Below, piece after piece: positions 19,816 to 43,674 of a stretch of 64,000 bases of DNA (its first letter is position 1; every line of letters starts with the position of its first letter). The DNA lies in IMG/VR virus record IMGVR_UViG_3300019458_000021, positions 62,001 through 126,000 of that record. One strand, given 5' to 3'. The position numbers and the translations under genes were made by a program. Under the pieces are notes generated by a model. It made no database searches. It saw nothing but the letters and a program-made list of their open reading frames with translations, and was not told the origin of the DNA.

Positions 19816-22800
19816 CTAGTCATCAAATATACCAGCAACTTCCAACACACGAATACCGTGCAAAGCTACCCAGGAGGTCTTAAAGATCTCACGGTATTTA
19901 GATTTCACGGACAATGCATCTAGCAGACAGTTAAACCAAATGTTGTTGACGTGTTCTGTACCAAATGTGTTGTAGATTGCATCCATTGCTGTGGCAATAT
20001 TCTCAGACGTGTCAAACGAGAACGTTGCAAAGAACGAGTTGATGTCTAGTGGATAAAAGTCGTTGTTCGGATCCTCGAGATACGCAATGACCGTTTGCAG
20101 CGACAATGTACCATCGGTGAATGACTGATCAACACCAAGACCGTATTGTGTATCCGTGCCAGAAATCTCATCATACAGCGTGCGCTCCAACGCTGGGACA
20201 CGAACGCTTGGATCAGCGAGCTTGTAGCCAATCAACGATTCCGTTAGACGGTCCCACAGACGGCGGTCAATGTTAGCCCCCTGGCTGCGACGAATTGCAA
20301 GCCATTCTTCATGCTTGTTTTTGAGGTTCAACGGTGTCGGACCGTCATCAAGAGTGTCACGAAGTGTCAGATCCCGTGTAAATCGCACTTCATAGCGATC
20401 ATCCGTTCGAATAAAGTCCGCAGCCTTACGAATGATCGCTTGGCGATAGAACACTGGAATAACAGGGTATTGATCATAGATCCAAGGCGCTGAATAAATG
20501 ATGCCAAATGTGATACCGTATCCGAACCGGTCCGCCAAAGTTGGATCATCTTCTGGACGCTGTACAACAAGATATAGCGTTGGAATCTGTTCGATCTGTT
20601 GGGCAACTTGGATCAAAGGCAATGCATCATTACGATCCTCGATCTTGTTCAATCGATTTTCAACCCAAAAGTAGAACAATGAACGCGTAACGTTGTCAAT
20701 TGTTACAACACGTTGTGTGTATTCGGTCTGTTGCTTGAATTGCGTGTGTGTTGTTCCGTCATCTGTCGTATCTGGGTCAAACGTAATCTGTTCTTCTGTG
20801 AGAACAGGAATTGGACGTACGACCGTCACAATATCGTTGATTGTGAGAGAGGTTGAATTCGAGATCTCCAGCGAATTATCAACAACAAGACCTGTTTCCA
20901 CGACAACTCCGTTCACATACATGTTGACAACATCACCAGAAGCAAACAAGTCGCTGTCAAGCGTAAATGTCGCAGGAACCGGAAGTGTATACCCGTCAAT
21001 AATTGGAATGATTTTTTGCGACACAATCGGTTTACGCACCCAAGATGTTGCTTTGAATGCTGGAACAACTTCTAGTGTTCCAATGCCGGCCGTACCGTAT
21101 TCGAACGGCGTACCATTTTCCGTGTCGCTTAGTTTGGTAATTGTTGATGTTGTACCCAGTGTTGCAAAATACTTTGTTGAACCAGCAAGCGTTGTAGTTG
21201 TTGTTAATGGAAGTTGCAGGTCGAATGTTGTGATCACAATCGTGCTTTCCACAGCTTCAACTGTTGTTGGTACACCTGTGAGAGCAGTTTGCATCAAAGC
21301 TGCAAGCTGTGTAACTGTCGTTGATGCAGAAGTAATTGTGATCGTGTAGTCGATTGCCGCTCCACCATTCACAGCGAGGGTAAAGTCATAGCTGCCAATA
21401 GCCAAATTTGTCAACGTTGTTGGTACTACTGCCGGTGTATCATAGAAAGTAACCGTTGCAATGGCTGGTGATGTTTCAAACACCGCTGGAACGACCGTAA
21501 TCGTTACAACCGCTGTCATCGAAGTTGCTAAACTGTCAAACAAGTCTGGATTAGCACCCGTTGTCGGACGAGTTGGTGTAATTGTTCCATTAACGACTAA
21601 CACTACTTCATCGCCTATGCTCAACGTGTTCACGCCAGCAATTTCATCGGTGCCGACGTTCACAGTCGCTGAAATTGGTGTACGTTCACGGAAGAAAGTT
21701 GTCATTCGTGGGGTACCAGTGATCTTGTCGTTTGACGCAATTGCTGTGTCATTGGTCTCATCAACAGCTGTTGCAGCCCATTCCTCAGGTGTGAATTGGC
21801 TTTCAACCCATTGATACACACGAACGTCGCCCCAATCCGCCAAACGACCCCAGTTGTAGAGGCGGTCGTTGAGATCCGGTAGGACAACATCGTCATAGTA
21901 CGGACGATATGCAAGCGTTGCTGTATCAAGCCACACTGTTTGTGTTTCAGCCTGATTCCATGGCTGTTGTGAGATGTCATTTGGATTCAACGTATTCGTA
22001 TACAGAGCTGGATCGACAGCATTTTGAATGTCAACATTATGAACGGCTGTGGGTGAGTGATATCCTCGAGCTGGATCCCACATCGGAACATTGGTCAGCA
22101 CCGTTCCGGCAACGTAATCGATGATCTTCGCAGGACTATTCTTTGTCTTACCTGGGTTGATCGTGAAGATCATGATAATGTCAGTGAAACCAGTCGTTGT
22201 AAACCGGATCACTTCCGAATTGATTCTTGAGAACTCATCTGCACCTGTGCCTTCAATCATATACGCTGTTGTATAGTTGCGTAAATCACCAGCAACAACA
22301 AGATCACGGTTGGTTACACGAACTGTGTCTGCAAAAGTTGGCAGCTGTATGTAGATATCACCGGCAACAGTTGTAATTTTGACTGGTACGTCAGTTGTCT
22401 GAACCCATTGTGTTCCATCCCAAATGAAGATGAAGCCAGTCGACTTTTCATACCACATGTCAACCGTTTCTTCGCCAGCTGTTGGAACAACATCAGAAGC
22501 ATAGATTGTTGTGAGAGTTGTCACCTGACTGTCTAAAAACAGGATTGAATTATCGAGCAACACCCGTTGCTCGGGCGCATCAATCCAACGGTCTTGATTG
22601 CTAAATGTTACAATCTTGAATCCCATTGCCTCATCAGCCTCAACCTGTGCCGTGTCTGATGCTTCTGTATCTGTCAAAAACTCGAGACGAACGTCATCGA
22701 CTTGGCCATCAGACGCAAACAATTTGATTTCTGGATACACACGCGGACGAACATCTCCAAATTGAGCAATCTTCCAAGCCCAAAACTCGTCGATTTTTGC

Positions 22801-25800
22801 GTCAACAAATCGACGAGAGTTGATGTACGCCTTGATTGCATTTGTTGATCCTTTTGCTTGGATCATACCGCGGTAGAAGACAAACTGTGTTTTTGCATTT
22901 GTGTTCAACAGATCCAAATATGGCTGTGAACCGGCACGGTAACCAAGCAATTGACGAGAGTTGAGACCAACCTTCGTAAGTTCCTTCAGCCCGTATGTGT
23001 CATAGTAGTTCTGCGAATCGACGGTCTGGCCTTCAATGTTGCGACGGTATTTGCCGCCGAGCAAGTAATATCCACCTAATGTTGGACGAAGTGAAAAATC
23101 GTTCTTTTCGTAGAAGTCCATGCCAAATCGCTGTGCTGTTAATCCGAGGAATGAATCGTACAGAATTTGATTGCTTGTTGTGTAATCGTTGAACAAACAA
23201 ATGTGCTCGTATCCTTCGATAAACAAGTGCGCTCCACCCATGTGAATATAGTTGTATGGGTCAGCGGTAGAGATTGATGGTGGAACAGTGTCGTTAGGAA
23301 GTTCTGTTCGCATTGCAAGACGGCTCTGTTTGTCTTCACGGAACACCAACAACTTATCAGCACTGATTGGCCGTGCATACTGGTCAAAGATCGTTTGCTG
23401 AACACGAATGTCTGCATACGGTCCTTGAACAACGTCCGAAAGAACACCTTGAGGCGTGTCAATCCACACATTGTTCCGAGCCGCATTCAACTCAAACGAT
23501 GGGAATGAAATCGGACGGCTTTGTGGAGCAATAAACATCACCCCACTGCCGTTTGTGAGAACGTCAACGATGCTTGCGTTCAACATGCGTGTGGTTGATA
23601 ACCTGAACTCACCTGACACGCCGGTCGGATTATAGTAGTATGGTGTGTTCGCGATGAACGGTTCTGGCAGAAGACCTGTTGATGACATTAAGATAGCAGT
23701 TCCTGGTTGCCACATTGGCACCTGACCTGAGAACGTCATGGTATTTGCGGCCAAGTCTGTCACAGTGAATTGATATTTGTCAGCAACGCTCATGCGTGTA
23801 CGACGTAGTCGGAACGCCCAATCGATGAATCGTTCTTCTTCAAGCTGCCAGTTAACTGTGCGTCCTGTTTCCGGATCCAGCTCTGTGAAGTCGCTCAAAT
23901 TGTACAAGACGCCAATGTCTTTCTGGTAGGCTGCGTAGCCGTCGATGATGTTAATCAGTCGCTGAATACCAGCGATCGAGTAAGGAGGAATAAACGTTCG
24001 AACCTTTGTCTTGTCCAGTGCATAGTGATACCAGATTTCTGTTGAAGGGCCCGCACCTCCAAACACTTGGAATGATGAATCGACTTGACCAACATTAAGA
24101 TCTCCTGTACCAGTTGTTGTCCACACAAAAGGAACACCAGCCAGCGCTGCATTTGGACTTTCTGCAACTCGGAACTGTCGATTGTTCAGTCGGATAATGT
24201 ACAATGGTTGATTCGGAACCAACGGAGCTGGTAACAATTTTGATGAAGTTACGAACACAAGATCGCCAGTTTGCCACGGTAGAACACTTAACGGAAAGTC
24301 AATCAAACCATTTGCGATTGAACTTGGTAGTGGTTCAAGTGTTGTGATTCTTGTCCTGTCAACCGATGGATCGTAAATCGAAGCAACAACGGTATAGGAA
24401 CCATCATTTCCTGTTGAGTTGATAACGTCAAATTCTTGATCCGGAGGAAAATCTGTCACATGATCACCATCAACCTCAAGCAGATTCGATACAGACAGTG
24501 CACCTGTAATTGTATAGCGGAAAATCGTTGCAGTGTTCGTAAGAATATCAACCGTGAACGGATAGTTGATCACGTCATAGTAGGAAACGTCGCGAGGAAT
24601 TGACGCAAGCGTTTCGATTTCAAGTTTCCACTGAGTTTGACTGTTGTACTGAACAAGTTGTGGTGGCATATTCAAGACAACGACTTCAAACGCATCTGAC
24701 CACATGTCTTTGATCACACCCATATTTGCGAGCAATACGTTGTAGTCTTGTGGACCAACATCAAAGTACTTGTTCGAAACTTCGAGAGTTGATGTGTCAA
24801 TAATGCCGGAGAATTGATAGGACAATAATGGATCCCAAGCTGTCCACAAAATACGGAATTCTTTGTTCGTGTCGTAGCCAACGAATCGGTCATAGTTCAC
24901 ATACCACTGGTTCAATCCTCGTGCTAGGAATGAGACGTCATTGTTGTAAATGTCGCCGTGGAACAGTGCGTCTTCGTGGTTGTACACCTGACAGAATGTT
25001 GGATCGATCTGAAGGTTGTTGACACGTATAAAATCAATGCCCCACGCATAGTGCATGAAGCGAACAGGTTGCATTCGAAATGCAATCACTAGTGGATCGT
25101 AAACATGCTCACCGGAAACCAACCACTGCCATTCTACAGGACCGCCGTCTCCAAACGCATAGTTCGCTCCAGGGGCAACAATCTCAGTCGACAAACTTGT
25201 GAAGAACGAGCGAACAATTGATGAAACGGTAGTGTAATACGGTGGCAACAGATCATCCGGTGCATAGTTGCCTTGAATTACACCGTCACTGATGTTGACG
25301 GAGAAATAGTTGTACACCAGCGTCACTTGGCCTGGTAGACCAGTTCCCGGCGAACCATCCGGAGCAGTACCACCCACAGGAATGGTACCAACACGAATAT
25401 TCTCCCACATACCAGTTGTTGTGCCGTGGTTGTAAATCCATCGACGGGTGCCGTTGGTTTCAAGGTAGAACGCATCCCACCAGTCAGGTTTGTCCGCAAA
25501 TCCCTGGAGTTTCCATGGCTCGAGATGTGGGTAAGGTGTATTGTACCATAGCGTGTAAAGCTGTTGCCAAGACCCTGCCAACCCAGGCGAAATCGAGAAC
25601 GTTGGTGGTGTAGTCAAGTTGCTATACACATAGTTCCATGTGAACGCATCTGACGGATTATACAACACATTTTCGAACGGTGCACGAATACGGCGAGCGG
25701 CGACAAATGCAAAGAATTGGTCTTCGGTATATTCATCGAAGAATGCTTGTTCACTTACATCGGGAGTTAACGATGAGTAATCGAATGCCGTTTCAGCGAA

Positions 25801-28800
25801 GTCAGGCGTAACAGCATGCAATTGTTCTTCGATTGAAAGGATTGTGTTTGCCAATAGCGCGCGCATATCAACTTGTTGCCATGCAATTGAGATCTCGCCA
25901 GCAGGTGCTGCAGCAACCCAAGAAACACCGTTCCATTCAAACAGTTGGTTAAATGTGGTGTTCCAGTACAAGGCACCAATTGGAACGCCAGCCGATGATG
26001 GCGCAACGGGCGAAACAGCAATCACGTTGAAGCGATACAAAACACGAGGCGCAATAGTCTGATACCAGTAAACACCGTTTCGAATCACACCAAACTCTGC
26101 AACGAACGTTGTTAGTGGGCAGCCAGGTGGTAATATGAACGGAAGCGTTGACATGAAACATGGTGGCGCTGTCGTAGAAATCTTTCCAAGAGTACCGTTT
26201 GTTACTCGCGTGTCCGGTAAACTACACAAAATACGTGCGATGCTATCTTCTTCGGCGGCTGTGAAATCAATACCCGAACGATGACCGTCGTGATGTAGAA
26301 TTTGATAGATGTTCAACTTCGAATCGATGTCTACAATCGGTTTTGTCTTTGGTCCGAGTGCAAACATTGGAACTGTTGCAACCCAATGACGTACACCAAT
26401 ATCGGTTACATTGTCGAACGCACTTGTATCAACATACACTTGGCCGTAGAAGTCGTTCGCTTCATAAGCGTCTTGAATCGTTTCGTTGATGAATCCTTGC
26501 AAGTCTGTGATTGTTTCCGTGTTGATTGTTGACAACATTGTCAACACGTTCTTCGTGTATAGTTCTTTAATCGCTAACAACAATGATGCATACTGTTGTT
26601 GTGCAAAATCAATGATGCCCAACGGGGTCACAACAGTCTCATTTACTGCAGAAATCAGAGTATCATAACTATCATTGTGCTCCTTGATCGTACCACCCAA
26701 CGAATAGTTGAACGACCCCTGCGTCAAAGCAGAAACTGTTCCGCCTGGGAATGCAAATGGATTTGGTTGTTCAGCAATGATTGATCGGAAATGTGAGACA
26801 AGCTCTGAGTAGGCAACAACCGCGCGGTTGTGATGCTCCGGATTGAATCGCCACTGATCAGGTATTTCCCAGTCACCAGTAGGATCGCCAACAGGCAGAG
26901 GATTTCGATTGCCGTCGACCCATTCGGGAATGTAAACACCACCAGTCCAATCGCTAGGTGGACCAGAAGTTCCGTTTGTGTATTGCGGGACGCTACGCCA
27001 AATCGTCGTCAGTGTTGGATCAGCTCCTTCGATACAAACAACCGGTGTTAGAAGGGAATCGTCCTGTTTCGGCTGAGCTTCTGTTGACCATGTGGTGCCA
27101 TTAGATCGGAAGACAATCTGCTGTTCGGGATCATAGTAAATGCTGTTAACAATTGTGACAAGATATGCAGGAGGATCTGTGCCAACAAACGGTGCATGCG
27201 TTTCAAAGCGATCGTTCGCATCTTGAATGACAAACAACGATTGCCATGCGTCACCATCCCATTGTTTTAGGACTTGTGTGCTGGTGTTATACCAGTAATC
27301 ACCCGACTGCACACGACCATCATGCAGGCGATAGCCGTAGATCTGACCATTATCTTCTGCAAGTAGGAACTGTTCGAATCCAAACTCCCGGCCACCATCT
27401 GAAACTGTAATACGCTTCTGAACAGAACGATTGATTGGCGCCGATGGATCTTCTTGGAAAGAAAAAATTGGCGATGCTTTGATGATTTCTCCCGTGCAGA
27501 CATTGTACACGTTGAACAACGGATACTGATTGATCAATATCTTGGCTTGTTCGTTTCGTTTGTATGTTTCACGTGCAAGATATTCTGGTTGAGTACCAGC
27601 AATCACAGCTGCAAGGAATGTCACTTCATCTTCAATTGTACGAACAGGAACATACTGTAGACCCATGTCACTCAACGAAGCCGGACCAACTTCAATGCGA
27701 ACAATGTCATATTGTGTCAGTGGTGTTGTAAAAATGATCTGCGTTACATAACCGAACGTTTGAGAAGTGTAGATGCTTGTACCGACTACCGTATAGTCCG
27801 GAGTACCGACAGTTGTTGTTTCTACATACTGACCATACTGACGAACATCGTTAACATATACACGAAGTTGGTCTTGTCCGGCAAGCGCAAACAGGGAACG
27901 GCCAGTCGTAATTGTACCAGAAGCGTTTGCTGCAGCAGGAATTGTTTCGTTGACGACAATGTTTGTATTCAGACCAACGTTTGTTGCCGACAATACTGTG
28001 TAGATGCCGTCGCCACCGCCCGTGTTGTCTGGAATGACAAACGACATGTTTGGGAAAAAGAATGATGCAAAATTGCCTGTAATTTGCCATGTTCCGTTAA
28101 CACCCACGATCACACCATTGATCGTAAATGCTGTCTCATTGATGAATTGGAATGAGGCATCGAGAGGGATAGTCGTTACGCCAACGCCCGTGACTGTTGT
28201 CTCTTGGAAATACTGGCCAACAGTCATTGGACCAATAGCTGGATTGCCGAAGAATGAGTATGGATCGCCGTCTTCTATCGCACGACGGAGCAGCGGGTTA
28301 CCGACAATCGATCCTTCCGCAGTAGTCACTTGTGATGCGGTGTTCATAACCCAATGAACATGATAGCCGCGCCAGGTGTCGCCAAGACTTGTCAAGCTCG
28401 GTTCAAGTCGTAAGTGTGTTGGACCACCACCGGTTGGGTACGTTGCAAAAAATACATCAACAGCTGGACCAGCCTCAATCAGTTTCACAATTGTTACCAT
28501 ATAGCGGCCTTGGACATCCGCTGGATCAGTTGGACCTCCTTCACGGTAAATTGAGTAGTCGACGGTGAATGTATTGTTCGTCACCGGCAGATCAGACTTC
28601 ACTAAAAAGTGAAAACCCGGAACAAATGTGTCTGTATAGTTTGTGTCACGCGCCTCAGTTTCTGACTTGTCAAACAAGTACAAGAACCATTCTGTGCCTG
28701 CCCCACCCCTGGTCAGCAATCCAGCCTTTGACTGGCTCAAGTTCAAGTCGTGTTGGCTGGCTAGTTGTTGCTGAAAACACACCACTTGTTGTTGGACGAT

Positions 28801-28893
28801 ACTTCCAACTATATGTGACCTTTGTCCATTCGTTGAGTTCCGTTCGGGAATCGTACTCGAGAATTGGAATTTGAGCACGCCGGACACCGGCAA
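19816..28893 (-). CDS. Giant baseplate wedge-type protein, C-terminal part (~3,000 aa; sensible frame begins ~28,700)
   Basis: 3025-codon open frame in the baseplate operon; first ~60 aa look like junk, then GGAGTEWFLY...; joins the upstream ORF by a 1-nt frameshift. Confidence 0.8.
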   Translation of the reverse strand: MPVSGVLKFQFSSTIPERNSTNGQRSHIVGSIVQQQVVCFQQQLASQHDLNLSQSKAGLLTRGGAGTEWFLYLFDKSETEARDTNYTDTFVPGFHFLVKSDLPVTNNTFTVDYSIYREGGPTDPADVQGRYMVTIVKLIEAGPAVDVFFATYPTGGGPTHLRLEPSLTSLGDTWRGYHVHWVMNTASQVTTAEGSIVGNPLLRRAIEDGDPYSFFGNPAIGPMTVGQYFQETTVTGVGVTTIPLDASFQFINETAFTINGVIVGVNGTWQITGNFASFFFPNMSFVIPDNTGGGDGIYTVLSATNVGLNTNIVVNETIPAAANASGTITTGRSLFALAGQDQLRVYVNDVRQYGQYVETTTVGTPDYTVVGTSIYTSQTFGYVTQIIFTTPLTQYDIVRIEVGPASLSDMGLQYVPVRTIEDEVTFLAAVIAGTQPEYLARETYKRNEQAKILINQYPLFNVYNVCTGEIIKASPIFSFQEDPSAPINRSVQKRITVSDGGREFGFEQFLLAEDNGQIYGYRLHDGRVQSGDYWYNTSTQVLKQWDGDAWQSLFVIQDANDRFETHAPFVGTDPPAYLVTIVNSIYYDPEQQIVFRSNGTTWSTEAQPKQDDSLLTPVVCIEGADPTLTTIWRSVPQYTNGTSGPPSDWTGGVYIPEWVDGNRNPLPVGDPTGDWEIPDQWRFNPEHHNRAVVAYSELVSHFRSIIAEQPNPFAFPGGTVSALTQGSFNYSLGGTIKEHNDSYDTLISAVNETVVTPLGIIDFAQQQYASLLLAIKELYTKNVLTMLSTINTETITDLQGFINETIQDAYEANDFYGQVYVDTSAFDNVTDIGVRHWVATVPMFALGPKTKPIVDIDSKLNIYQILHHDGHRSGIDFTAAEEDSIARILCSLPDTRVTNGTLGKISTTAPPCFMSTLPFILPPGCPLTTFVAEFGVIRNGVYWYQTIAPRVLYRFNVIAVSPVAPSSAGVPIGALYWNTTFNQLFEWNGVSWVAAAPAGEISIAWQQVDMRALLANTILSIEEQLHAVTPDFAETAFDYSSLTPDVSEQAFFDEYTEDQFFAFVAARRIRAPFENVLYNPSDAFTWNYVYSNLTTPPTFSISPGLAGSWQQLYTLWYNTPYPHLEPWKLQGFADKPDWWDAFYLETNGTRRWIYNHGTTTGMWENIRVGTIPVGGTAPDGSPGTGLPGQVTLVYNYFSVNISDGVIQGNYAPDDLLPPYYTTVSSIVRSFFTSLSTEIVAPGANYAFGDGGPVEWQWLVSGEHVYDPLVIAFRMQPVRFMHYAWGIDFIRVNNLQIDPTFCQVYNHEDALFHGDIYNNDVSFLARGLNQWYVNYDRFVGYDTNKEFRILWTAWDPLLSYQFSGIIDTSTLEVSNKYFDVGPQDYNVLLANMGVIKDMWSDAFEVVVLNMPPQLVQYNSQTQWKLEIETLASIPRDVSYYDVINYPFTVDILTNTATIFRYTITGALSVSNLLEVDGDHVTDFPPDQEFDVINSTGNDGSYTVVASIYDPSVDRTRITTLEPLPSSIANGLIDFPLSVLPWQTGDLVFVTSSKLLPAPLVPNQPLYIIRLNNRQFRVAESPNAALAGVPFVWTTTGTGDLNVGQVDSSFQVFGGAGPSTEIWYHYALDKTKVRTFIPPYSIAGIQRLINIIDGYAAYQKDIGVLYNLSDFTELDPETGRTVNWQLEEERFIDWAFRLRRTRMSVADKYQFTVTDLAANTMTFSGQVPMWQPGTAILMSSTGLLPEPFIANTPYYYNPTGVSGEFRLSTTRMLNASIVDVLTNGSGVMFIAPQSRPISFPSFELNAARNNVWIDTPQGVLSDVVQGPYADIRVQQTIFDQYARPISADKLLVFREDKQSRLAMRTELPNDTVPPSISTADPYNYIHMGGAHLFIEGYEHICLFNDYTTSNQILYDSFLGLTAQRFGMDFYEKNDFSLRPTLGGYYLLGGKYRRNIEGQTVDSQNYYDTYGLKELTKVGLNSRQLLGYRAGSQPYLDLLNTNAKTQFVFYRGMIQAKGSTNAIKAYINSRRFVDAKIDEFWAWKIAQFGDVRPRVYPEIKLFASDGQVDDVRLEFLTDTEASDTAQVEADEAMGFKIVTFSNQDRWIDAPEQRVLLDNSILFLDSQVTTLTTIYASDVVPTAGEETVDMWYEKSTGFIFIWDGTQWVQTTDVPVKITTVAGDIYIQLPTFADTVRVTNRDLVVAGDLRNYTTAYMIEGTGADEFSRINSEVIRFTTTGFTDIIMIFTINPGKTKNSPAKIIDYVAGTVLTNVPMWDPARGYHSPTAVHNVDIQNAVDPALYTNTLNPNDISQQPWNQAETQTVWLDTATLAYRPYYDDVVLPDLNDRLYNWGRLADWGDVRVYQWVESQFTPEEWAATAVDETNDTAIASNDKITGTPRMTTFFRERTPISATVNVGTDEIAGVNTLSIGDEVVLVVNGTITPTRPTTGANPDLFDSLATSMTAVVTITVVPAVFETSPAIATVTFYDTPAVVPTTLTNLAIGSYDFTLAVNGGAAIDYTITITSASTTVTQLAALMQTALTGVPTTVEAVESTIVITTFDLQLPLTTTTTLAGSTKYFATLGTTSTITKLSDTENGTPFEYGTAGIGTLEVVPAFKATSWVRKPIVSQKIIPIIDGYTLPVPATFTLDSDLFASGDVVNMYVNGVVVETGLVVDNSLEISNSTSLTINDIVTVVRPIPVLTEEQITFDPDTTDDGTTHTQFKQQTEYTQRVVTIDNVTRSLFYFWVENRLNKIEDRNDALPLIQVAQQIEQIPTLYLVVQRPEDDPTLADRFGYGITFGIIYSAPWIYDQYPVIPVFYRQAIIRKAADFIRTDDRYEVRFTRDLTLRDTLDDGPTPLNLKNKHEEWLAIRRSQGANIDRRLWDRLTESLIGYKLADPSVRVPALERTLYDEISGTDTQYGLGVDQSFTDGTLSLQTVIAYLEDPNNDFYPLDINSFFATFSFDTSENIATAMDAIYNTFGTEHVNNIWFNCLLDALSVKSKYREIFKTSWVALHGIRVLEVAGIFDD

Positions 28894-38741: not shown

Positions 38742-39073
38742 TAGGCACCCGATACAACCAATGGTTTCGTCAAGAACTCAGTCTGAACACGTTCACGAGT
38801 TGGAAGAAGGATTTCTTTCCCTTCAGCGAATTCGAGATTTATGTCGACGATGTTGTTATAAAGCAAGATCACCCATGCAAGTGTTGCTTTACCATACACA
38901 TCGTATGCCAATAAGTCGGGACGAACAGCGTATCGCGGTGTAATTGTCAGTTTGATATCTGTCACAGAAGGTGCGTAGATTCGACGTTCCCACCATCCCA
39001 ATCGATCACGGAGCTGTTCTACTGTTCCACCCTGTACGTATCTTCCGTCACGTGTTTGATCTGATCTTGCCAT
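38741..39073 (-). CDS. LysM-like baseplate protein (gp53-like)
   Basis: RYAVRPDLLAYDVYG...LAWVILLYNNI.D......G..I.LP. Confidence 0.85.
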   Translation of the reverse strand: MARSDQTRDGRYVQGGTVEQLRDRLGWWERRIYAPSVTDIKLTITPRYAVRPDLLAYDVYGKATLAWVILLYNNIVDINLEFAEGKEILLPTRERVQTEFLTKPLVVSGA

Positions 39074-39082
39074 TGTTGTTCC

Positions 39083-39847
39083 TTAGAACGAGTCCAGTTG
39101 ACCCGTCTTGTATTTAATCAGTGAGAATCGTTCAAACTCACGAGGCGAATGGGTTTCTGCCAGTTCAATCGACACATCCCAACGCACAGGACATGGTTGA
39201 CGATAAAGATTCGGAATGTAGTCAACATCATCCGGATACGTAATGCTCAAGCTCGTAAGGACAACAGGAATCTTGTTCAGGTGAACATTTGGCAATCGAG
39301 AACGATCTGTGTCCGGAGCGGAATATGCATATAGGTAAAGAACTTCTGGAGGCGCTCCGAGCAGCTCAAACCCAGTCTTTGACGCTCGAGCGCGCAACGT
39401 CTGAATCTCAGCTGCTTGTGCTGGATCAAGCGCACGTTGCTGTTCGCGCATCATCTGTTGCATTGCACGGTCACGAGCAGTTGCTTCACTCTCCAACTGG
39501 CGTCGCTTGTTCGATTGACTATCTGTCAATGTTGAACTTCCAACACCAAAGAAAGGAAAACGCCACGAACGGAGCAGCTGTACTGCTTCCATGCTTTGTG
39601 TTGCTTCGCCGCTGGTACGTGAAATGAACTTGTGAGAGATGGAAAACGAGCGAGGCTGAGTGTTCTTATACACTTGTATTGCTCCAGGCATGTGAATCGG
39701 CATCACCGGTGTGTACTCTACACCGCCGCTCTCGGTAAACTGAGGCGTGTTGTCAAACACGACTTGTTGAACACGAAACCGGTCATCGCCTGTTGCAATG
39801 TTGTTCAGAGATGACACTAGTCGAACCTTAAAGATGCTGTTGGCCAT
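39083..39847 (-). CDS. Tail tube initiator/baseplate protein (gp48/gp54- or CIS-tube-like)
   Basis: FDNTP...ES..VEY, YKNT.PRSFSI, GAPPEVLYL, IPVVLTSLSITYPDDVDY; TAAATA at 39867-39872. Confidence 0.65.
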   Translation of the reverse strand: MANSIFKVRLVSSLNNIATGDDRFRVQQVVFDNTPQFTESGGVEYTPVMPIHMPGAIQVYKNTQPRSFSISHKFISRTSGEATQSMEAVQLLRSWRFPFFGVGSSTLTDSQSNKRRQLESEATARDRAMQQMMREQQRALDPAQAAEIQTLRARASKTGFELLGAPPEVLYLYAYSAPDTDRSRLPNVHLNKIPVVLTSLSITYPDDVDYIPNLYRQPCPVRWDVSIELAETHSPREFERFSLIKYKTGQLDSF

Positions 39848-39857
39848 TTTCCACTCG

Positions 39858-39873
39858 GTAAATAAGTATTTAC
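39858..39873. promoter_or_regulatory. Palindromic face-to-face late promoter pair
   Basis: GTAAATA-AG-TATTTAC inverted repeat giving TAAATA on both strands. Confidence 0.6.
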
Positions 39874-39878
39874 ACCTG

Positions 39879-39906
39879 TTGCCCTAAAGGAAAAATCCAC
39901 TATAAT
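39879..39906 (+). promoter_or_regulatory. Sigma70-type promoter of the late sigma gene
   Basis: TTGCCC-16 nt-TATAAT upstream of ATG 39943. Confidence 0.6.
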
Positions 39907-39942
39907 GACCAGAGAAGCCGTAATTTCACAAGGAAGGCTCGA

Positions 39943-41817
39943 ATGAATAACAAGAAGAAATCGACCAAGAAGGCTAGTGAGAAGCTGTCTTACTACCAGC
40001 GAAAAAAACTAGAACGTCTAAAAGAAGAACGAAGAGCTCTTCGTGAACAACGTAAGAAACAAAAAGAGAAAGAAGCGAAGAACCCTAAAATCGCAAAGCG
40101 CAAAAAATCAAAGAAACAGGGTCCTGACAAAGCCAAAGTCAAGCGCTCTCCTGTTACCAAGCCGAAAAAACAACCTCGTGTTAAAGCAGTTGAGATTCTG
40201 CCTCAACTCGTTGTAGTTGACCTTCCAGAATTGGAGGAAGAGAAACCCATCTACAATCCAACCGCCGCAAGTGCTCTTGCAGGTAAGAATATCTATCTGA
40301 ACAACAGGGACTTGCTTGCTGCTGTCAAAGACAGCAAGAAGAGGGGAGAGATGTCAGATAAGTTGGCTCGAATGCTACAGTTGCTTTGTGCCAAGTATGC
40401 AAAGAAAGGCAACTTTATCAACTACTGTGTTGATAGTGCCACACTAGCACTAACAAAAAGTGGTTGGAAAACACATCAACAAATGACAACGGACGATGAG
40501 ATTCTTTCGTATAACCTGGAAACACAACAGCTGGTATGGTCAAAAGTTCTTGAAGTGTTTCGAAATAACTACTCAAGTACGATGCACAAACTAGCAACAC
40601 AAGGACTCGATGCTCTAGTAACACCAAATCATAAGTTTGTTTCCATAGAACGTGGTTTGATTCCCGTTGAAGACATCATCTGCAATGAACACATCGTTTT
40701 AATGGGACAACCGGTGGCAGATGGTAGTATTATCTATCCCGATGATGTTGTGGAGCTTGTAGGATGGTGTGTTACTGAAGGACACTACAGCACTAAATCT
40801 AAAAAGCGACACTCGATACAGATTTCCCAAAAACAAGGAGCCAAAGCTAACCGAATCCGTGAACTGTTACAGTCACTTGCTATTCCCCATAAGGAATATC
40901 TGAACAAACAGGGGATTATTCTCTTTAACTGTACAGGCGTCTGGATATCAAAAATACATCAAACAATTGCTCCGTCTCGTGTACCTGCATGCGAATTTCT
41001 TTTAGACCTTATTCAAACACAACGACTGTTACTTATCAAAACTATGGTGGCTGGAGATGGATGGATGCGACCATCAGGAGGGATGTCATACGTGCAAAAG
41101 TCCCCCGAACATATTGACGCATTCCTAATGCTCTGTACATTGGCAGGTCAGACTGTTTCTGTCACACCAATGACATACAAAACACCTACCAGTCGAAAAA
41201 ATCCCAATGGCGGTGTTAGCGATGTACTCAGCGTGAACATTTATAGTGAACCTAAAACAACATGTCGTGCGGAGTGGATTGACTTTCATGGTGGAAAGCA
41301 AACAGCTGGCGGTCGCAGGAACGACAAACCGAACCTACCCACCGAGCAATACACCGGACAGATATGGTGCCCACGGACTGAGTATGGAACTTTTGTCGCT
41401 CGTCGTGGCAAGTATATCTACATCACAGGGAATACGTACAATGACGACATGCAAGGGTATGCAATGATGATGCTTGTTCGGACGTGGAACAGTTTCGATC
41501 CTGAACGTAGCGAGAACGCATTTGCATTCTATACACAGTGTATCAAGAGTTCGTTCATTCAATATCTCAACCAAGAGAAACGACAACGAACAATTCGTGA
41601 TATGATGCTTGTCGATCAAGGTCTCAATCCTTCTTTCAGTTATGAAGGTGAGGGCAGTGATCAACATATTCTTGAGGATGAACAGGACTTTTATGCGCAG
41701 AAACGTGCAGCTGATCTGTTAACACGACTTCCTAGAGAATACGAAGAGGGTTCGACAGATGTTGACAGAACCCCCTCGGAACCAGATAATGTTGAGTCTA
41801 ACAATACTGCCAGATAA
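39943..41817 (+). CDS. gp55: Late-transcription sigma factor (T4 gp55-like) with intein and basic N-terminal extension
   Basis: IYLNNRDLL..V; exteins join to KGNFINY/TYNDDM; FDPERSENAFAFYTQCIKSSFIQYLNQEKRQ; gene order 55-47-46 as in T4. Confidence 0.9.
   Translation: MNNKKKSTKKASEKLSYYQRKKLERLKEERRALREQRKKQKEKEAKNPKIAKRKKSKKQGPDKAKVKRSPVTKPKKQPRVKAVEILPQLVVVDLPELEEEKPIYNPTAASALAGKNIYLNNRDLLAAVKDSKKRGEMSDKLARMLQLLCAKYAKKGNFINYCVDSATLALTKSGWKTHQQMTTDDEILSYNLETQQLVWSKVLEVFRNNYSSTMHKLATQGLDALVTPNHKFVSIERGLIPVEDIICNEHIVLMGQPVADGSIIYPDDVVELVGWCVTEGHYSTKSKKRHSIQISQKQGAKANRIRELLQSLAIPHKEYLNKQGIILFNCTGVWISKIHQTIAPSRVPACEFLLDLIQTQRLLLIKTMVAGDGWMRPSGGMSYVQKSPEHIDAFLMLCTLAGQTVSVTPMTYKTPTSRKNPNGGVSDVLSVNIYSEPKTTCRAEWIDFHGGKQTAGGRRNDKPNLPTEQYTGQIWCPRTEYGTFVARRGKYIYITGNTYNDDMQGYAMMMLVRTWNSFDPERSENAFAFYTQCIKSSFIQYLNQEKRQRTIRDMMLVDQGLNPSFSYEGEGSDQHILEDEQDFYAQKRAADLLTRLPREYEEGSTDVDRTPSEPDNVESNNTAR
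40426..41433 (+). mobile_element. Intein (336 aa) with LAGLIDADG-type endonuclease
   Basis: Starts at Cys162 (CVDSATLALTKSGW); block B LVTPNHKF; LVGWCVTEGHY and IKTMVAGDGW; block F IWCPRTEYGTFVA; ends ITGN followed by Thr+1. Confidence 0.92.
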
Positions 41818-42538
41818 AACCGCCAGCGGTTTTTGATTTACCACGACAACATTCACTAATGTTATGTAACATTACACCTGTTGCATGTTGTGCGGCTGTT
41901 AGTGATCGAAACGTTCTAATTAGAATACCATCAAGTGATAATTGCCGAACTGTGCGAAAATATTTCTTTGAGAAAATCGGAGGCGAAGATCCATAATAAC
42001 ACCATAAAAAACCACCCGCCGATCTTCTCTTTCCCTTGCAACACTGACTGATGTACGAGGCGTTTGCTTTCGTCACTTCACTTGCCAATTTGCATGACGA
42101 GAAACTTGCAAGCAACTTTCCGTCAAGCGAATATTGCGAAACTGGTTTCTCTATGATCGGCAAATATCCACGTTTTCCTTTCATCTTCGTACTTAGGATT
42201 TTGCGTCGAACATTAGTCCACGCGGTAGAGTTTCCTTCACCACCTTCAGTCAGATTACATAGAATACCGGTGTGATTTATCAATCGCCCGTAGTAACTTA
42301 TCAGTTCTTTCTCTTTTTGAAAAGCCTCCGCTTCACTTACATTAATTAAAACTTTTTCGTATACAGGCTTCTTTCCTCGTTGATAGAGCTTACATAACTT
42401 ATTTTTCAACAAAGGATTTGTCAATCGACTTCGCACACGATTATGCTCGTACATACGCGTTCCTGAACCTTTACCTACGTAGAAAGGTTGTCGCGAATCC
42501 GGATCTATAATACAATACGTGTAGAAATTTCTATTCAT
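41798..42538 (-). CDS. GIY-YIG-like homing endonuclease with two NUMOD1 domains
   Basis: FYTYCIID...PFYVGKG...R.Y.H; two V.Q.SLDG.L...F.S...A......IS.CC.GK...AGGF.W repeats. Confidence 0.85.
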   Translation of the reverse strand: MNRNFYTYCIIDPDSRQPFYVGKGSGTRMYEHNRVRSRLTNPLLKNKLCKLYQRGKKPVYEKVLINVSEAEAFQKEKELISYYGRLINHTGILCNLTEGGEGNSTAWTNVRRKILSTKMKGKRGYLPIIEKPVSQYSLDGKLLASFSSCKLASEVTKANASYISQCCKGKRRSAGGFLWCYYGSSPPIFSKKYFRTVRQLSLDGILIRTFRSLTAAQHATGVMLHNISECCRGKSKTAGGFIWQYC

Positions 42539-42551
42539 AATAAGAAGTTCC

Positions 42552-42583
42552 GTAAATATTTACCGTAATGAATGGTATTTATA
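42552..42583. promoter_or_regulatory. Late promoter cluster between divergent genes
   Basis: Palindrome GTAAATATTTAC 42552-42563 and a perfect TATAAATA on the minus strand at 42576-42583. Confidence 0.65.
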
Positions 42584-43674
42584 AGGAGACTGCCTTGAGC
42601 AAACAATTGCGGAAAATGGCCGCACTAACCGATATACACTTCGGTAAAAAAGCAAATTCACAGCTGCATAATGAAGACTGTTTACGATTTATCGATTGGT
42701 TTCTTATTCAGGCGCAAGAAAACAACTGCGATTACATTGCTTTCCTTGGTGATTGGAACGAGAACAGAAGCGCCCTAAACATTGCAACACTCAACTTCTC
42801 ATACCAGGGAGCAAAACGGATTAACGCCGTTGGACTCCCGGTCTTCTTTTGTATTGGGAATCACGACCTTTACCATCGACACACACGAGAAGTGTATTCT
42901 GTCGTTCCTTTCCAGGAATTCAAACACTTCCAAATGATCGATCAACCAATTCTCATTCCGGAGATCGGTGATGGAGCTGTATTCAGTCCATATCTTTTTC
43001 ACGACGAATATCCTGGAATGATGCAGTACTTAGACACACCGTTTTGGGCTGGTCATTTCGAGTTTCAAGGATTTCAAGTCACTGGATATGGTGTGAAGAT
43101 GCAAACAGGACCTGATCCAAAGTTGTTCAAAGGTCCGAAACACATCGTATCAGGCCACTTCCATAAGCGACAAACAATGGATAACATAGTCTACATGGGG
43201 AATTGTTTTCCAATGGATTTCGGTGATACGGGCGATGACAATCGCGGAATGATGATCTATGATCATGTTACACAAGAAATGACGTTCATCAACTGGGCCG
43301 ACTGTCCGAAGTATGTCAAGACAAAGTACACTGATCTTCTTGATGGAGTTGTTGATATTCCTGTTCAATCGCGTGTTCGTTGTATAATGGATGATCCACA
43401 CGCATCATTTGAGGAAATTACTTTTGTTCGAGCAACTTGGCTCGAGAAATACAACCTTCGTGAATTTATCATGGAGGAGACAATGCATCTTGATGAAGCG
43501 CGAACGTCTACAGTAACGACAGCTGATGTGAATTCGCTCGAGACAGACATCGATTCCGCTAAGGATGAAACCAACAGTTTCGACGAACTTGTCGTGCAGA
43601 TGTTGAATGACATCAAGAGTGACGCAATCGACAACACTCTTCTCATCGAACAATACAGGATGATTCCGTCATGA
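42568..43674 (+). CDS. gp47: Recombination endonuclease subunit (gp47, Mre11/SbcD-like)
   Basis: TDIHFG, FLGDW, IGNHD, GHFE, SGHFH metallophosphoesterase motifs; likely real start TTG 42595 after AAGGAG. Confidence 0.95.
   Translation: MNGIYKETALSKQLRKMAALTDIHFGKKANSQLHNEDCLRFIDWFLIQAQENNCDYIAFLGDWNENRSALNIATLNFSYQGAKRINAVGLPVFFCIGNHDLYHRHTREVYSVVPFQEFKHFQMIDQPILIPEIGDGAVFSPYLFHDEYPGMMQYLDTPFWAGHFEFQGFQVTGYGVKMQTGPDPKLFKGPKHIVSGHFHKRQTMDNIVYMGNCFPMDFGDTGDDNRGMMIYDHVTQEMTFINWADCPKYVKTKYTDLLDGVVDIPVQSRVRCIMDDPHASFEEITFVRATWLEKYNLREFIMEETMHLDEARTSTVTTADVNSLETDIDSAKDETNSFDELVVQMLNDIKSDAIDNTLLIEQYRMIPS

What the first reader, a model, noticed from the sequence alone, without database searches (positions are those of the whole stretch)
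40426..41433. Intein inside the late sigma factor: protein splicing may gate all late gene expression
Seen: a complete 336-aa intein (Cys1, TxxH block B, two LAGLIDADG-like motifs, terminal Gly-Asn, Thr+1) inserted in the conserved NFxxY/TY motif of gp55. Established: inteins cluster in replication, repair and packaging enzymes, and some splice conditionally. I do not recall one in a phage sigma factor, but cannot search. Inference: about 20 TAAATA promoters in this window depend on this protein, so splicing rate or conditions (redox, metal, temperature, ssDNA) could act as a switch into virion assembly and lysis. The penultimate Gly instead of His may affect kinetics.
Basis: partly seen in the sequence, partly recalled or inferred. 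Interest (0 to 1): 0.8.

Follow-up and report, generated by a model that had tools for sequence, protein, structure and literature searches.

The report
Mobile intein inside phage late sigma factor
The late-gene sigma factor (gp55) of this T4-like jumbo phage from a cave metagenome is interrupted by a real, intact, mobile self-splicing intein. The same insertion is common in environmental phages but appears undescribed, and it looks like a selfish homing element rather than a regulatory switch.

Summary
ORF 39943-41817 (+) encodes a gp55-type late sigma factor split by a 336-aa intein at exactly 40426-41433 (NFINY|CVDS...YITGN|TYND). All splicing residues and both LAGLIDADG motifs are present. 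The AlphaFold model (pLDDT 96) matches PI-SceI-type inteins.

The site is not unique. Cultured Synechococcus phages B3 and B23 carry an allelic intein at the same gp55 position, unannotated. About 114 metagenomic protein clusters and 458 IMG/VR stretches do too. I found no paper describing it.

The evidence points to a selfish homing element:
- Intein-free gp55 alleles with an intact target site are abundant and interleave with occupied ones on the extein tree.
- Against a co-occurring relative, the intein is a 92% nucleotide-identity island in 61-78% flanks.
- dN/dS of the endonuclease domain is 0.14.

The penultimate Gly is a family trait (TGN in 115 of 120 sequences). A homologous mycobacteriophage intein and the AceL NrdHF intein both end in TGN and splice fast. 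Mutating that Gly to His slowed the first and abolished activity in the second.

About 20 TAAATA motifs do sit upstream of genes, so mature sigma logically requires splicing. Nothing supports conditional gating, although two invariant active-site cysteines leave a redox effect possible.

Verdict: new member of a known kind, moderate interest.

The parts
39943..41817 (+). gp55 (late sigma factor) precursor ORF, 624 aa including the intein
   Evidence: ORF list. PHROG 234/12791 and Sigma70_r2 on the C-extein. Intein-free gp55 profile covers both exteins. Synteny baseplate-gp53-like / gp55 / gp47 / gp46.
39943..40425 (+). N-extein, 161 aa: a Lys-rich extension of about 110 aa, then the conserved gp55 core ending ...KKGNFINY
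   Evidence: gp55 profile positions 11-64 align to the last ~54 residues. The extension has no family hit and is only 41-47% nt identical to relatives.
40426..40725 (+). Intein N-terminal splicing region (aa 1-100): block A Cys1 (40426-40428); block B T66-P-N-H69-K70-F71 (40621-40638)
   Evidence: Cys1 120/120, T66 119/120, H69 120/120, K/R70 120/120 across relatives. Intein_splicing Pfam hit. Profile hit to AceL NrdHF intein 6zgq.
40726..41325 (+). LAGLIDADG homing-endonuclease domain (aa ~101-300): motif 1 at 40750-40782 (E118), motif 2 at 41029-41061 (D211)
   Evidence: LAGLIDADG_3 Pfam hit. E118 105/120 and D211 103/120 conserved. Fold matches I-DmoI and PI-SceI. dN/dS 0.137 against L004.
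41326..41433 (+). Intein C-terminal splicing region (aa 301-336): block F W314-C315-P316 (41365-41373); block G T334-G335-N336 (41425-41433)
   Evidence: W314 and C315 120/120, T334 111/120, G335 115/120, N336 119/120. The same WC...TGN signature occurs in the mycobacteriophage RDF intein.
41434..41817 (+). C-extein, 127 aa plus stop, starting Thr+1 (TYNDDMQGY...): sigma region-2-like helices that bind RNAP and the promoter
   Evidence: PHROG 234 at 1.9e-17, Sigma70_r2 profile positions 25-70. +1 is Thr 79 / Ser 41 of 120. T4 gp55 7d7c homology via XacN1 gp55.
39859..39864 (+). TAAATA late-promoter-like motif 79 nt upstream of the gp55 start; forms a palindrome with the oppositely oriented copy at 39867-39872
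   Evidence: Whether it acts as a promoter for gp55 itself is untested.

Best explanation
This is a mobile intein that carries a LAGLIDADG homing endonuclease. It is inserted in frame in the sigma-region-2 homology domain of the T4-type late sigma factor gp55, between helices H2 and H3. The gene is translated as a 624-aa precursor. The intein must then cut itself out and join NFINY to TYNDD to give a 288-aa sigma factor that can bind the RNA polymerase clamp helices and read the TAAATA-type late promoters. The chemistry is most likely class 1: Cys1 forms the thioester, Thr+1 attacks it, and Asn336 cyclises. Lys70 (block B position 11) probably stands in for the missing penultimate His. The excised intein, or the precursor, supplies an endonuclease that cuts intein-free gp55 alleles of co-infecting relatives, so the intein is copied in by repair (homing). 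It persists because it is selfish and sits in an essential, conserved site. Splicing is probably fast and unconditional, so any effect on late-gene timing is a by-product. Shown here: anatomy, homology, fold, conservation, empty alleles and horizontal transfer. Inferred: that it splices, its splicing rate, endonuclease activity and precursor inactivity.
For: - Anatomy and fold.
- Same site in cultured phages B3/B23, in about 114 metagenomic gp55 clusters and in all 80 best IMG/VR loci of 458. Only 7 weak hits in 185,579 species genomes.
- Empty alleles: 120 listed intein-free gp55 proteins, many with contiguous NF[VI]NY|[ST]YN[DE]D. A syntenic empty locus, L085, has a junction 52/60 nt identical to the window's spliced junction.
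- Sporadic distribution: at least 18 gain/loss changes on the extein tree, and intein-free P0131 and P0126 are among the window's four nearest relatives.
- Horizontal transfer: window vs P0002 is 93% aa in the intein but 76% in the extein; vs P0003 it is 73% and 87%. Nucleotide identity to L004/L007 is 92.3% in the intein against 71.5% and 78% in the extein cores, 61% in the upstream gene and 65% in gp47. Both phage types occur in the same two IMG samples.
- In run X1 the intein-core unitig has higher depth (44.9 vs 39.3), and a second contig enters it from a divergent N-extein.
- Purifying selection on the whole intein and on the endonuclease domain: dN/dS 0.13 and 0.14.
- Mini-intein derivatives exist (136-246 aa), as expected from the homing cycle.
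- Fast splicing by analogy: the homologous 317-aa mycobacteriophage RDF intein has the same WC...TGN signature (profile E 3.7e-24). The Bethlehem version splices completely, and G316H slows it (PMC5050341). The AceL NrdHF intein, also ending TGN with a basic residue at B:11, splices in minutes, and G145H impaired all its activity (PMC7891396).
- Essential site: it equals T4 Y63|T64, just before H3, whose E70/D74/E77 bind the beta' clamp helices.
Against: - No experiment here shows splicing, its rate or endonuclease cleavage.
- No intein-free allele of this same phage was seen in the two runs that hold it (no joints), so ongoing homing into this lineage is not directly observed.
- Intein presence is strongly clustered on the extein tree (18 changes vs about 78 for shuffled labels), so long vertical inheritance also occurs. 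That is compatible with a tolerated or even useful resident.
- Both Cys1 and Cys315 are invariant in 120 sequences. This is more than plain class 1 chemistry needs and leaves room for redox sensitivity or a different nucleophile.
- The rest of the ~352-kb genome was not available, so a second sigma gene elsewhere cannot be excluded.
Confidence: 0.8

Rival explanations
1. Conditional-splicing switch: the intein has been co-opted so that splicing of gp55 responds to a signal such as redox state, metal, temperature or DNA, and so times or vetoes all late transcription.
For: - Mature sigma logically needs splicing, and about 20 TAAATA-preceded genes in the window would depend on it.
- Two invariant cysteines, Cys1 and Cys315 at block F position 4, should lie together in the active site and could form a reversible disulfide (position by analogy with PMC7664689 and PMC7891396).
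- Oxidant-sensitive splicing is documented for other cysteine-dependent inteins (PMC6195587, listed).
- The intein is retained across deep gp55 divergence.
Against: - The distribution is sporadic and interleaved with empty alleles.
- There is a clear recent horizontal-transfer island.
- The endonuclease is kept under selection. Endonuclease-free mini-inteins, the expected end state of a domesticated regulator, are rare: 4 of 120.
- Only 2 of 511 cultured phage records with a gp55 match carry it.
- Relatives with the same catalytic signature splice quickly and completely without special conditions.
Confidence: 0.1
2. Same element, different chemistry: it splices by a class-3-like route in which Cys315 (block F position 4), not Cys1, attacks the N-terminal junction and forms the first branched thioester.
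For: - Cys at F:4 is invariant (120/120) and Thr at G:5 is present in 111/120, two of the three class 3 hallmark residues (definitions).
- The Cys315-to-Asn336 spacing of 21 residues matches class 3 inteins (MchDnaB1 Cys124 to about Asn145, AceL Cys124 to Asn146).
- The best sequence match among solved structures is the class 3 AceL NrdHF intein, which also ends TGN and lacks both assisting histidines.
Against: - Cys1 is invariant in 120/120, whereas class 3 inteins are defined by lacking it.
- Block B position 12 is Phe in 90/120 and Trp in only 3/120.
- The homologous RDF intein was treated as class 1 (PMC5050341).
Confidence: 0.12
3. A dead insertion: the intein no longer splices, so this gp55 copy is a pseudogene or works with a permanent 38-kDa insert, and another sigma elsewhere in the genome drives late genes.
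For: Pfam and NCBIfam intein hits are below their curated cut-offs. The penultimate His is missing. Only 64 kb of a ~352-kb genome was inspected.
Against: - Every catalytic position is intact and invariant across 120 relatives.
- dN/dS is 0.13, and the model is very confident.
- The ORF is open through both junctions and the exteins are conserved.
- No second gp55 or intein copy is in the window.
- None of the 120 listed intein-free gp55 clusters has a longest contig of the window's contig length.
Confidence: 0.03

Closest known systems
Allelic gp55 intein of Synechococcus phages B3 and B23 (MN695334 / MN695335, gp289 'T4-like gp55')
   Same: Same host protein and same insertion point (NFANY|CVDS...LTGN|SY), same length class, same TGN end, 42% identity over all 336 aa.
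   Different: The exteins are very divergent: the junction is only 35/60 nt identical. The host phage is a cyanomyovirus. The gene is annotated only as a hypothetical protein and the genome announcement does not mention the intein.
Mycobacteriophage cluster A1 RDF / metallophosphoesterase intein (Bethlehem gp51; homologue MetalQZJ gp50)
   Same: Homologous end to end (profile E 3.7e-24). It has Cys1, block B TxNH+basic, block F WC, a TGN C-terminus, Ser/Thr +1 and a LAGLIDADG domain. Experiments showed complete splicing, and penultimate Gly to His slowed it (PMC5050341).
   Different: Different host protein and insertion site. About 25% identity. Actinobacteriophage rather than T4-like jumbo phage.
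AceL NrdHF-1-1 intein (PDB 6ZGQ), a naturally split class 3 intein
   Same: Best sequence hit among solved structures. It has Cys at F:4, a Thr-Gly-Asn end, no His at F:13 or G:6, and a basic residue at B:11 that assists Asn cyclisation.
   Different: It has Ala1, no endonuclease, and is split into two genes. Its class 3 mechanism is proven. The window intein has an invariant Cys1 and is contiguous.
PI-SceI / PI-PfuI / TliVMA-type LAGLIDADG inteins
   Same: Two-domain architecture of a HINT splicing domain plus a LAGLIDADG endonuclease. Top structural matches, Foldseek E 6e-14 to 1e-8, TM 0.5-0.64.
   Different: 9-14% sequence identity, no extra DNA-recognition region, and archaeal or yeast hosts in VMA/RNR-type genes.
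T4 gp55 (PDB 7D7C/7D7D), late promoter specificity factor
   Same: The exteins are homologous (PHROG 234; XacN1 gp55 bridges to 7d7c_F). The NF..Y|T motif is conserved (T4 NFSGY|TQ). Gene order gp55-gp47-gp46 is shared.
   Different: T4 gp55 has no intein and no Lys-rich N-terminal extension. The promoter motif enriched here is TAAATA, not the full TATAAATA.

Membership tests
Intein (HINT protein-splicing domain) | N-terminal nucleophile (Cys/Ser/Thr at position 1) | tested here: met
   Cys1 at 40426-40428; invariant in 120/120 relatives.
Intein (HINT protein-splicing domain) | Block B Thr-x-x-His | tested here: met
   T66-P-N-H69; T 119/120, H 120/120.
Intein (HINT protein-splicing domain) | C-terminal Asn followed by a Cys/Ser/Thr +1 extein residue | tested here: met
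   N336 119/120; +1 is Thr 79 / Ser 41.
Intein (HINT protein-splicing domain) | HINT fold | tested here: met
   AF2 pLDDT 96. Foldseek top hits are inteins. Profile hits to three solved mini-inteins.
Intein (HINT protein-splicing domain) | In-frame insertion in a conserved host protein, for which uninterrupted alleles exist | tested here: met
   Intein-free gp55 with contiguous NFINY|TYNDD (P0131) and a syntenic empty locus, L085.
Intein (HINT protein-splicing domain) | Actual protein splicing | not testable with these tools
   Needs expression and a gel or mass-spectrometry assay. Inferred from conservation and from spliced relatives.
LAGLIDADG homing endonuclease | Two LAGLIDADG helices, each ending in a catalytic acidic residue | tested here: met
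   VELVGWCVTEG (E118, 105/120) and LLIKTMVAGDG (D211, 103/120); Pfam LAGLIDADG_3.
LAGLIDADG homing endonuclease | Alpha-beta-beta-alpha-beta-beta-alpha pseudo-dimer fold | tested here: met
   Foldseek hits to I-DmoI and I-Tsp061I over about 180 residues, E 5e-7 to 1e-5.
LAGLIDADG homing endonuclease | Mobility (homing) into empty alleles | tested here: met
   Indirect only. A 92% nt island in 61-78% flanks against a co-occurring phage; intein/extein incongruence; at least 18 presence/absence changes. Cleavage itself was not tested.
Class 1 intein | Cys/Ser/Thr1 together with standard blocks A, B, F, G; usually Asp at F:4 and His at G:6 | tested here: inconclusive
   Cys1, B:7 Thr, B:10 His and G:7 Asn are present. 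F:4 is Cys and G:6 is Gly. Class 1 inteins with Cys at F:4 and with penultimate Gly are both documented, so membership is likely. The nucleophile actually used is untested.
Class 3 intein | No nucleophile at position 1 | tested here: not met
   Cys1 invariant.
Class 3 intein | WCT triplet: Trp B:12, Cys F:4, Thr G:5 | tested here: not met
   B:12 is Phe (F 90, L 12, W 3 of 120). Cys F:4 (120/120) and Thr G:5 (111/120) are present. Two of the three positions are met.
T4-type late sigma factor gp55 | Sequence homology to gp55 / sigma region 2 | tested here: met
   PHROG 234 at 1.9e-17 and Sigma70_r2 on the C-extein. Homologue XacN1 gp55 hits PDB 7d7c_F.
T4-type late sigma factor gp55 | T4-like genomic context and a short A/T-rich -10-like late promoter upstream of structural genes | tested here: met
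   gp53-like, gp47, gp46 and gp20 portal genes nearby. TAAATA enriched: 20 of 33 in 5.4% non-coding DNA, typically 19-24 nt before starts. Promoter function was not tested.
Conditional (environment-sensing) intein | Splicing rate or yield changes with a physiological signal | not testable with these tools
   Only suggestive: two invariant active-site cysteines. Relatives splice constitutively.

The most novel reading that the evidence does not exclude
The gp55 intein family, with its invariant pair of active-site cysteines (Cys1 and Cys at block F position 4), is reversibly switched off by oxidation or metal binding. In hundreds of T4-like jumbo phages and some cyanophages, late transcription would then be held back post-translationally until the infected cell is in a permissive state. 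That would be a protein-splicing checkpoint on a viral developmental programme.
Probability: 0.1. Interest if true: 0.8.

Novelty: new member of a known kind. Interest (0 to 1): 0.42.

Why it matters
Inteins are known mostly from replication, repair, nucleotide-metabolism and packaging enzymes. A promoter-specificity factor is an unusual host, and I found no paper that reports it. Here the whole late programme of a phage depends on one protein-splicing event, and the insertion is common: 458 IMG/VR stretches, about 114 protein clusters, and two cultured cyanophages. That gives three practical gains:

- A correction for the annotation of many 'hypothetical' 500-650-aa phage proteins that are really gp55 plus an intein.
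- A clean natural example of recent intein homing between co-occurring jumbo phages.
- A culturable system (phages B3/B23) in which to test whether splicing of a transcription factor ever limits or tunes a viral life cycle.

The family also combines Cys1 with the class-3-type Cys F:4, Thr G:5 and Gly G:6. This makes it a useful test case for how class 3 inteins arose.

Tried and rejected
- Megablast of the gene against 50,697 phage records found nothing, so there is no close cultured relative.
- The canonical T4 late promoter TATAAATA occurs only 3 times, not clearly above chance. The shorter TAAATA is the enriched motif.
- Pfam and NCBIfam intein models hit only below their curated cut-offs. 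I did not rely on them and used homologues, profile searches and structure instead.
- Read laying showed no joint that would mark an intein-free allele of this phage. Logan contigs drop rare variants, so this does not prove absence.
I used IMG/VR locus L009 of that type instead.
- Tori & Perler 2011, on class 3 definitions, is not held. The definitions came from PMC3196547, PMC7664689 and PMC7891396.
- The structure tool returns no coordinates, so I could not measure the Cys1-Cys315 distance.
- A class 3 assignment was considered and rejected as membership (Cys1 present, no Trp at B:12). It is kept only as a mechanistic rival.
- A second gp55 or intein copy in the window was searched for and not found.
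- A scan of 185,579 species genomes gave only 7 weak relatives, so a cellular origin or reservoir is not supported.
Full report
**1. The observation**

The window has a single 624-aa ORF at 39943-41817 (+). Reading the DNA shows TGT (Cys) at 40426, GGG-AAT (Gly-Asn) at 41428-41433 and ACG (Thr) at 41434.

Pfam finds Intein_splicing and LAGLIDADG_3 in the insert, and Sigma70_r2 just after it. PHROGs puts the C-extein in phrog_234, 'late sigma transcription factor', at 1.9e-17. The intein models score below their curated thresholds, so I tested the call independently in four ways:

- tblastn of the insert against 50,697 phage genomes hits 137 records. These are annotated inteins in terminase, portal, methylase, thymidylate synthase and phosphoesterase genes.
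- A 63-sequence profile of relatives scores 1.9e-149 on this ORF and on nothing else in the window.
- AlphaFold2 on that alignment gives pLDDT 96.0 and pTM 0.92.
- Foldseek against the PDB returns endonuclease-bearing inteins first (TliVMA, PhoVMA, PI-PfuI, PI-SceI; E 6e-14 to 1e-8), then LAGLIDADG enzymes such as I-DmoI.

**2. The host protein and the site**

A profile built from 100-odd intein-free gp55 proteins aligns to both exteins. Positions 11-64 end at ...NFINY, and positions 54-169 resume at TYNDD. Excision would therefore restore an ordinary gp55.

The Xanthomonas jumbo phage XacN1 gp55 is the best cultured extein relative. It links by sequence to T4 gp55 in PDB 7D7C/7D7D. In that alignment the insertion point equals T4 Tyr63|Thr64. 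The cryo-EM paper shows that T4 gp55 helices H1-H4 form the sigma-region-2 homology domain, and that E70, D74 and E77 of H3 bind the beta' clamp helices (PMC7892883). The intein therefore sits a few residues before H3. I infer that a 38-kDa insert there prevents the domain from forming, so the precursor is inactive.

The surrounding genes are T4-like: a gp53-like baseplate protein, gp47 and gp46 nucleases, and the gp20 portal. The source is a cave metagenome. The phage is in IMG/VR as contigs L005 and L006, about 100% identical.

**3. The promoter claim**

TAAATA occurs 33 times against 17.5 expected, and none of 100 shuffles reaches 33. With crude gene calls, 94.6% of the window is coding, yet 20 of the 33 motifs are intergenic. 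Twenty-two lie in the right orientation within 120 nt upstream of a start, and about 15 of these are 19-24 nt upstream, including the portal gene. The full T4 octamer TATAAATA is not enriched.

**4. The site is not unique**

The best phage hit of the intein (42% identity over all 336 aa) is in Synechococcus phages B23 and B3. There it lies inside gp289, which is noted as 'T4-like gp55' but named hypothetical. Alignment shows the same insertion point, NFANY|CVDS...LTGN|SY. The genome announcement does not mention it.

A search of 5.8 billion proteins returned 124 hits, of which 120 are listed. About 114 of the listed ones are gp55 with the intein at this site. Six carry the same intein family in other proteins: ParB-like/DUF4417, PolA and one unknown.

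IMG/VR holds 458 stretches encoding relatives, and all 80 of the best are in gp55 at this site. A scan of one genome per 185,579 prokaryotic species gave only 7 weak relatives, so the family is essentially viral.

Full-text searches for intein with gp55, late sigma factor, jumbo phage, and several direct phrases found no paper describing it.

**5. Conservation and catalytic signature**

| Position | Residue | Conservation in 120 relatives |
|---|---|---|
| Block A, position 1 | Cys1 | 120 |
| B:7 | Thr66 | 119 |
| B:10 | His69 | 120 |
| B:11 | Lys/Arg70 | 120 |
| Block F | Trp314 | 120 |
| F:4 | Cys315 | 120 |
| G:5 | Thr334 | 111 |
| G:6 | Gly335 | 115 |
| G:7 | Asn336 | 119 |
| +1 | Thr/Ser | 120 |
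| LAGLIDADG motif 1 | Glu118 | 105 |
| LAGLIDADG motif 2 | Asp211 | 103 |

The penultimate Gly is thus the normal state of the family, not a defect.

Two characterised inteins share the signature. The first is the 317-aa mycobacteriophage RDF/phosphoesterase intein. Its MetalQZJ gp50 homologue aligns end to end with the family profile (E 3.7e-24) and ends ...EVWCL...HLTGN|S. For the Bethlehem version, Kelley et al. showed complete splicing, and G316H caused precursor accumulation (PMC5050341).

The second is the AceL NrdHF intein (6ZGQ), the best sequence match among solved structures. It also ends Thr-Gly-Asn and lacks both assisting histidines. It uses Arg at B:11 in their place, splices within minutes, and G145H impaired all its activity (PMC7891396).

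By analogy, Lys70 compensates here and splicing should be efficient.

**6. Mechanistic class**

Cys at F:4 and Thr at G:5 are two of the three class 3 hallmarks. Class 3 inteins, however, lack a position-1 nucleophile and have Trp at B:12. Here Cys1 is invariant and B:12 is Phe. [quoted passage not shown]

I therefore file it as class 1 with class-3-like residues. I keep a class-3-like route, and a Cys1-Cys315 redox effect, as untested possibilities.

**7. Selfish element or regulator?**

Intein-free gp55 proteins of 182-215 aa are abundant. Many have the contiguous motif NF[VI]NY|[ST]YN[DE]D, and P0131 has exactly NFINY|TYNDD. A syntenic empty locus, L085, has the same gene order, and its junction is 52/60 nt identical to the window's spliced junction.

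On a FastTree of 234 exteins (quick method, short alignment), presence or absence needs at least 18 changes, against about 78 for shuffled labels. Two of the window's four nearest relatives are intein-free.

Intein and extein histories disagree:

| Comparison with the window | Intein identity (aa) | Extein identity (aa) |
|---|---|---|
| P0002 | 93% | 76% |
| P0003 | 73% | 87% |
| A distant gp55 group (P0037-P0040) | ~52% | ~22% |

At the DNA level, comparing the window with L004/L007 (P0002-type, a 355.6-kb contig) gives:

| Region | Nucleotide identity |
|---|---|
| Intein | 92.3% |
| N-extein core | 71.5% |
| C-extein core | 78% |
| Upstream gene | 61% |
| gp47 | 65% |

Identity declines gradually into the C-extein (84%, then 77%), as a co-conversion tract would. 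Both phage types occur in the same two IMG samples, 3300019487 and 3300019458.

In sequencing run X1 the assembly graph forks about 25-55 nt inside each end of the intein. The 937-nt core unitig has depth 44.9 against 39.3 for the flanks. A 4,050-nt contig of depth 7.8 joins it from a divergent N-extein. I infer that a further gp55 allele carries the identical core.

Between the window and L004, dN/dS is 0.13 for the whole intein and 0.14 for the endonuclease domain. Endonuclease-less mini-inteins exist but are rare, 4 of 120.

All of this fits the homing cycle of a selfish intein with an active endonuclease. A domesticated regulator would be expected to lose the endonuclease and be inherited vertically.

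**8. Verdict on the interpretation**

The logical dependency is real: no splicing means no late sigma. The evidence gives no support for gating, and the penultimate Gly argues against slow kinetics if anything.

My best explanation is a mobile class-1-type LAGLIDADG intein at a new host site that splices constitutively (confidence about 0.8). The conditional-switch reading remains possible at about 0.1.

In novelty terms it is a new member of a known kind. It is unpublished as far as I could search, but it is already widespread in public sequence data.

**9. Limits**

- Nothing here demonstrates splicing, cleavage or timing.
- The extein tree used the quick method on a short alignment. The two protein sets were also collected with different queries.
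- Logan contigs cannot show rare empty alleles.
- Only 64 kb of the genome was visible.
- The mapping onto T4 helices goes through a pairwise HMMER alignment of a homologue.

Noticed in passing
window 41798-42538 (-): A free-standing GIY-YIG homing endonuclease gene with NUMOD DNA-binding repeats lies convergent to gp55 and overlaps its 3' end by 20 nt. It has a TAAATA motif 19 nt upstream. It is absent from relatives L004/L007 and L085, where gp47 follows gp55 directly. The gp55-gp47 junction therefore carries a second, independent mobile endonuclease.
   Followed up: partly
window 39943-40270 (+): The gp55 N-extein starts with a Lys/Arg/Glu-rich extension of about 110 aa that T4, XacN1 and most relatives lack. 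It stays in frame in P0002 and P0003 but is only 41-47% nt identical, and it has no family hit. Its function is unknown.
   Followed up: partly
window 39859-39872 and 42553-42562: TAAATA motifs of divergent gene pairs form palindromes (TAAATAagTATTTA; TAAATATTTA). One short A/T element seems to serve both directions. One of them lies 79 nt upstream of gp55 itself, which hints at possible late-promoter read-in to the sigma gene.
   Followed up: no
proteins P0109-P0113, P0118, P0120: The same intein family (CVD...WCP...TGN) also sits in non-sigma hosts: ParB-like/DUF4417 proteins, a family-A DNA polymerase and one unknown protein. The family has therefore moved to ectopic sites.
   Followed up: partly
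sequencing runs X1/X2 laid on window 39000-43000: Assembly unitigs break just inside both intein ends. In X1 the intein core has extra depth and a second contig enters it from a divergent N-extein. In X2 an intein variant of roughly 92% identity is deeper than the window's own. Several gp55-intein alleles coexist in the cave community.
   Followed up: partly
L004:6948-7406: The 355.6-kb relative has a NADAR-domain gene inserted between gp47 and gp46. The window lacks it.
   Followed up: no
window 19816-28893 (-): A single 3025-aa ORF with a TAAATA motif just upstream (19805 is for the next gene; 19895 lies inside it). It was not examined.
   Followed up: no
proteins P0116, P0117, P0111, P0119: These are gp55 inteins of only 136-246 aa. 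They are mini-inteins that have lost all or part of the LAGLIDADG domain while keeping CVD...TGN ends.
   Followed up: partly
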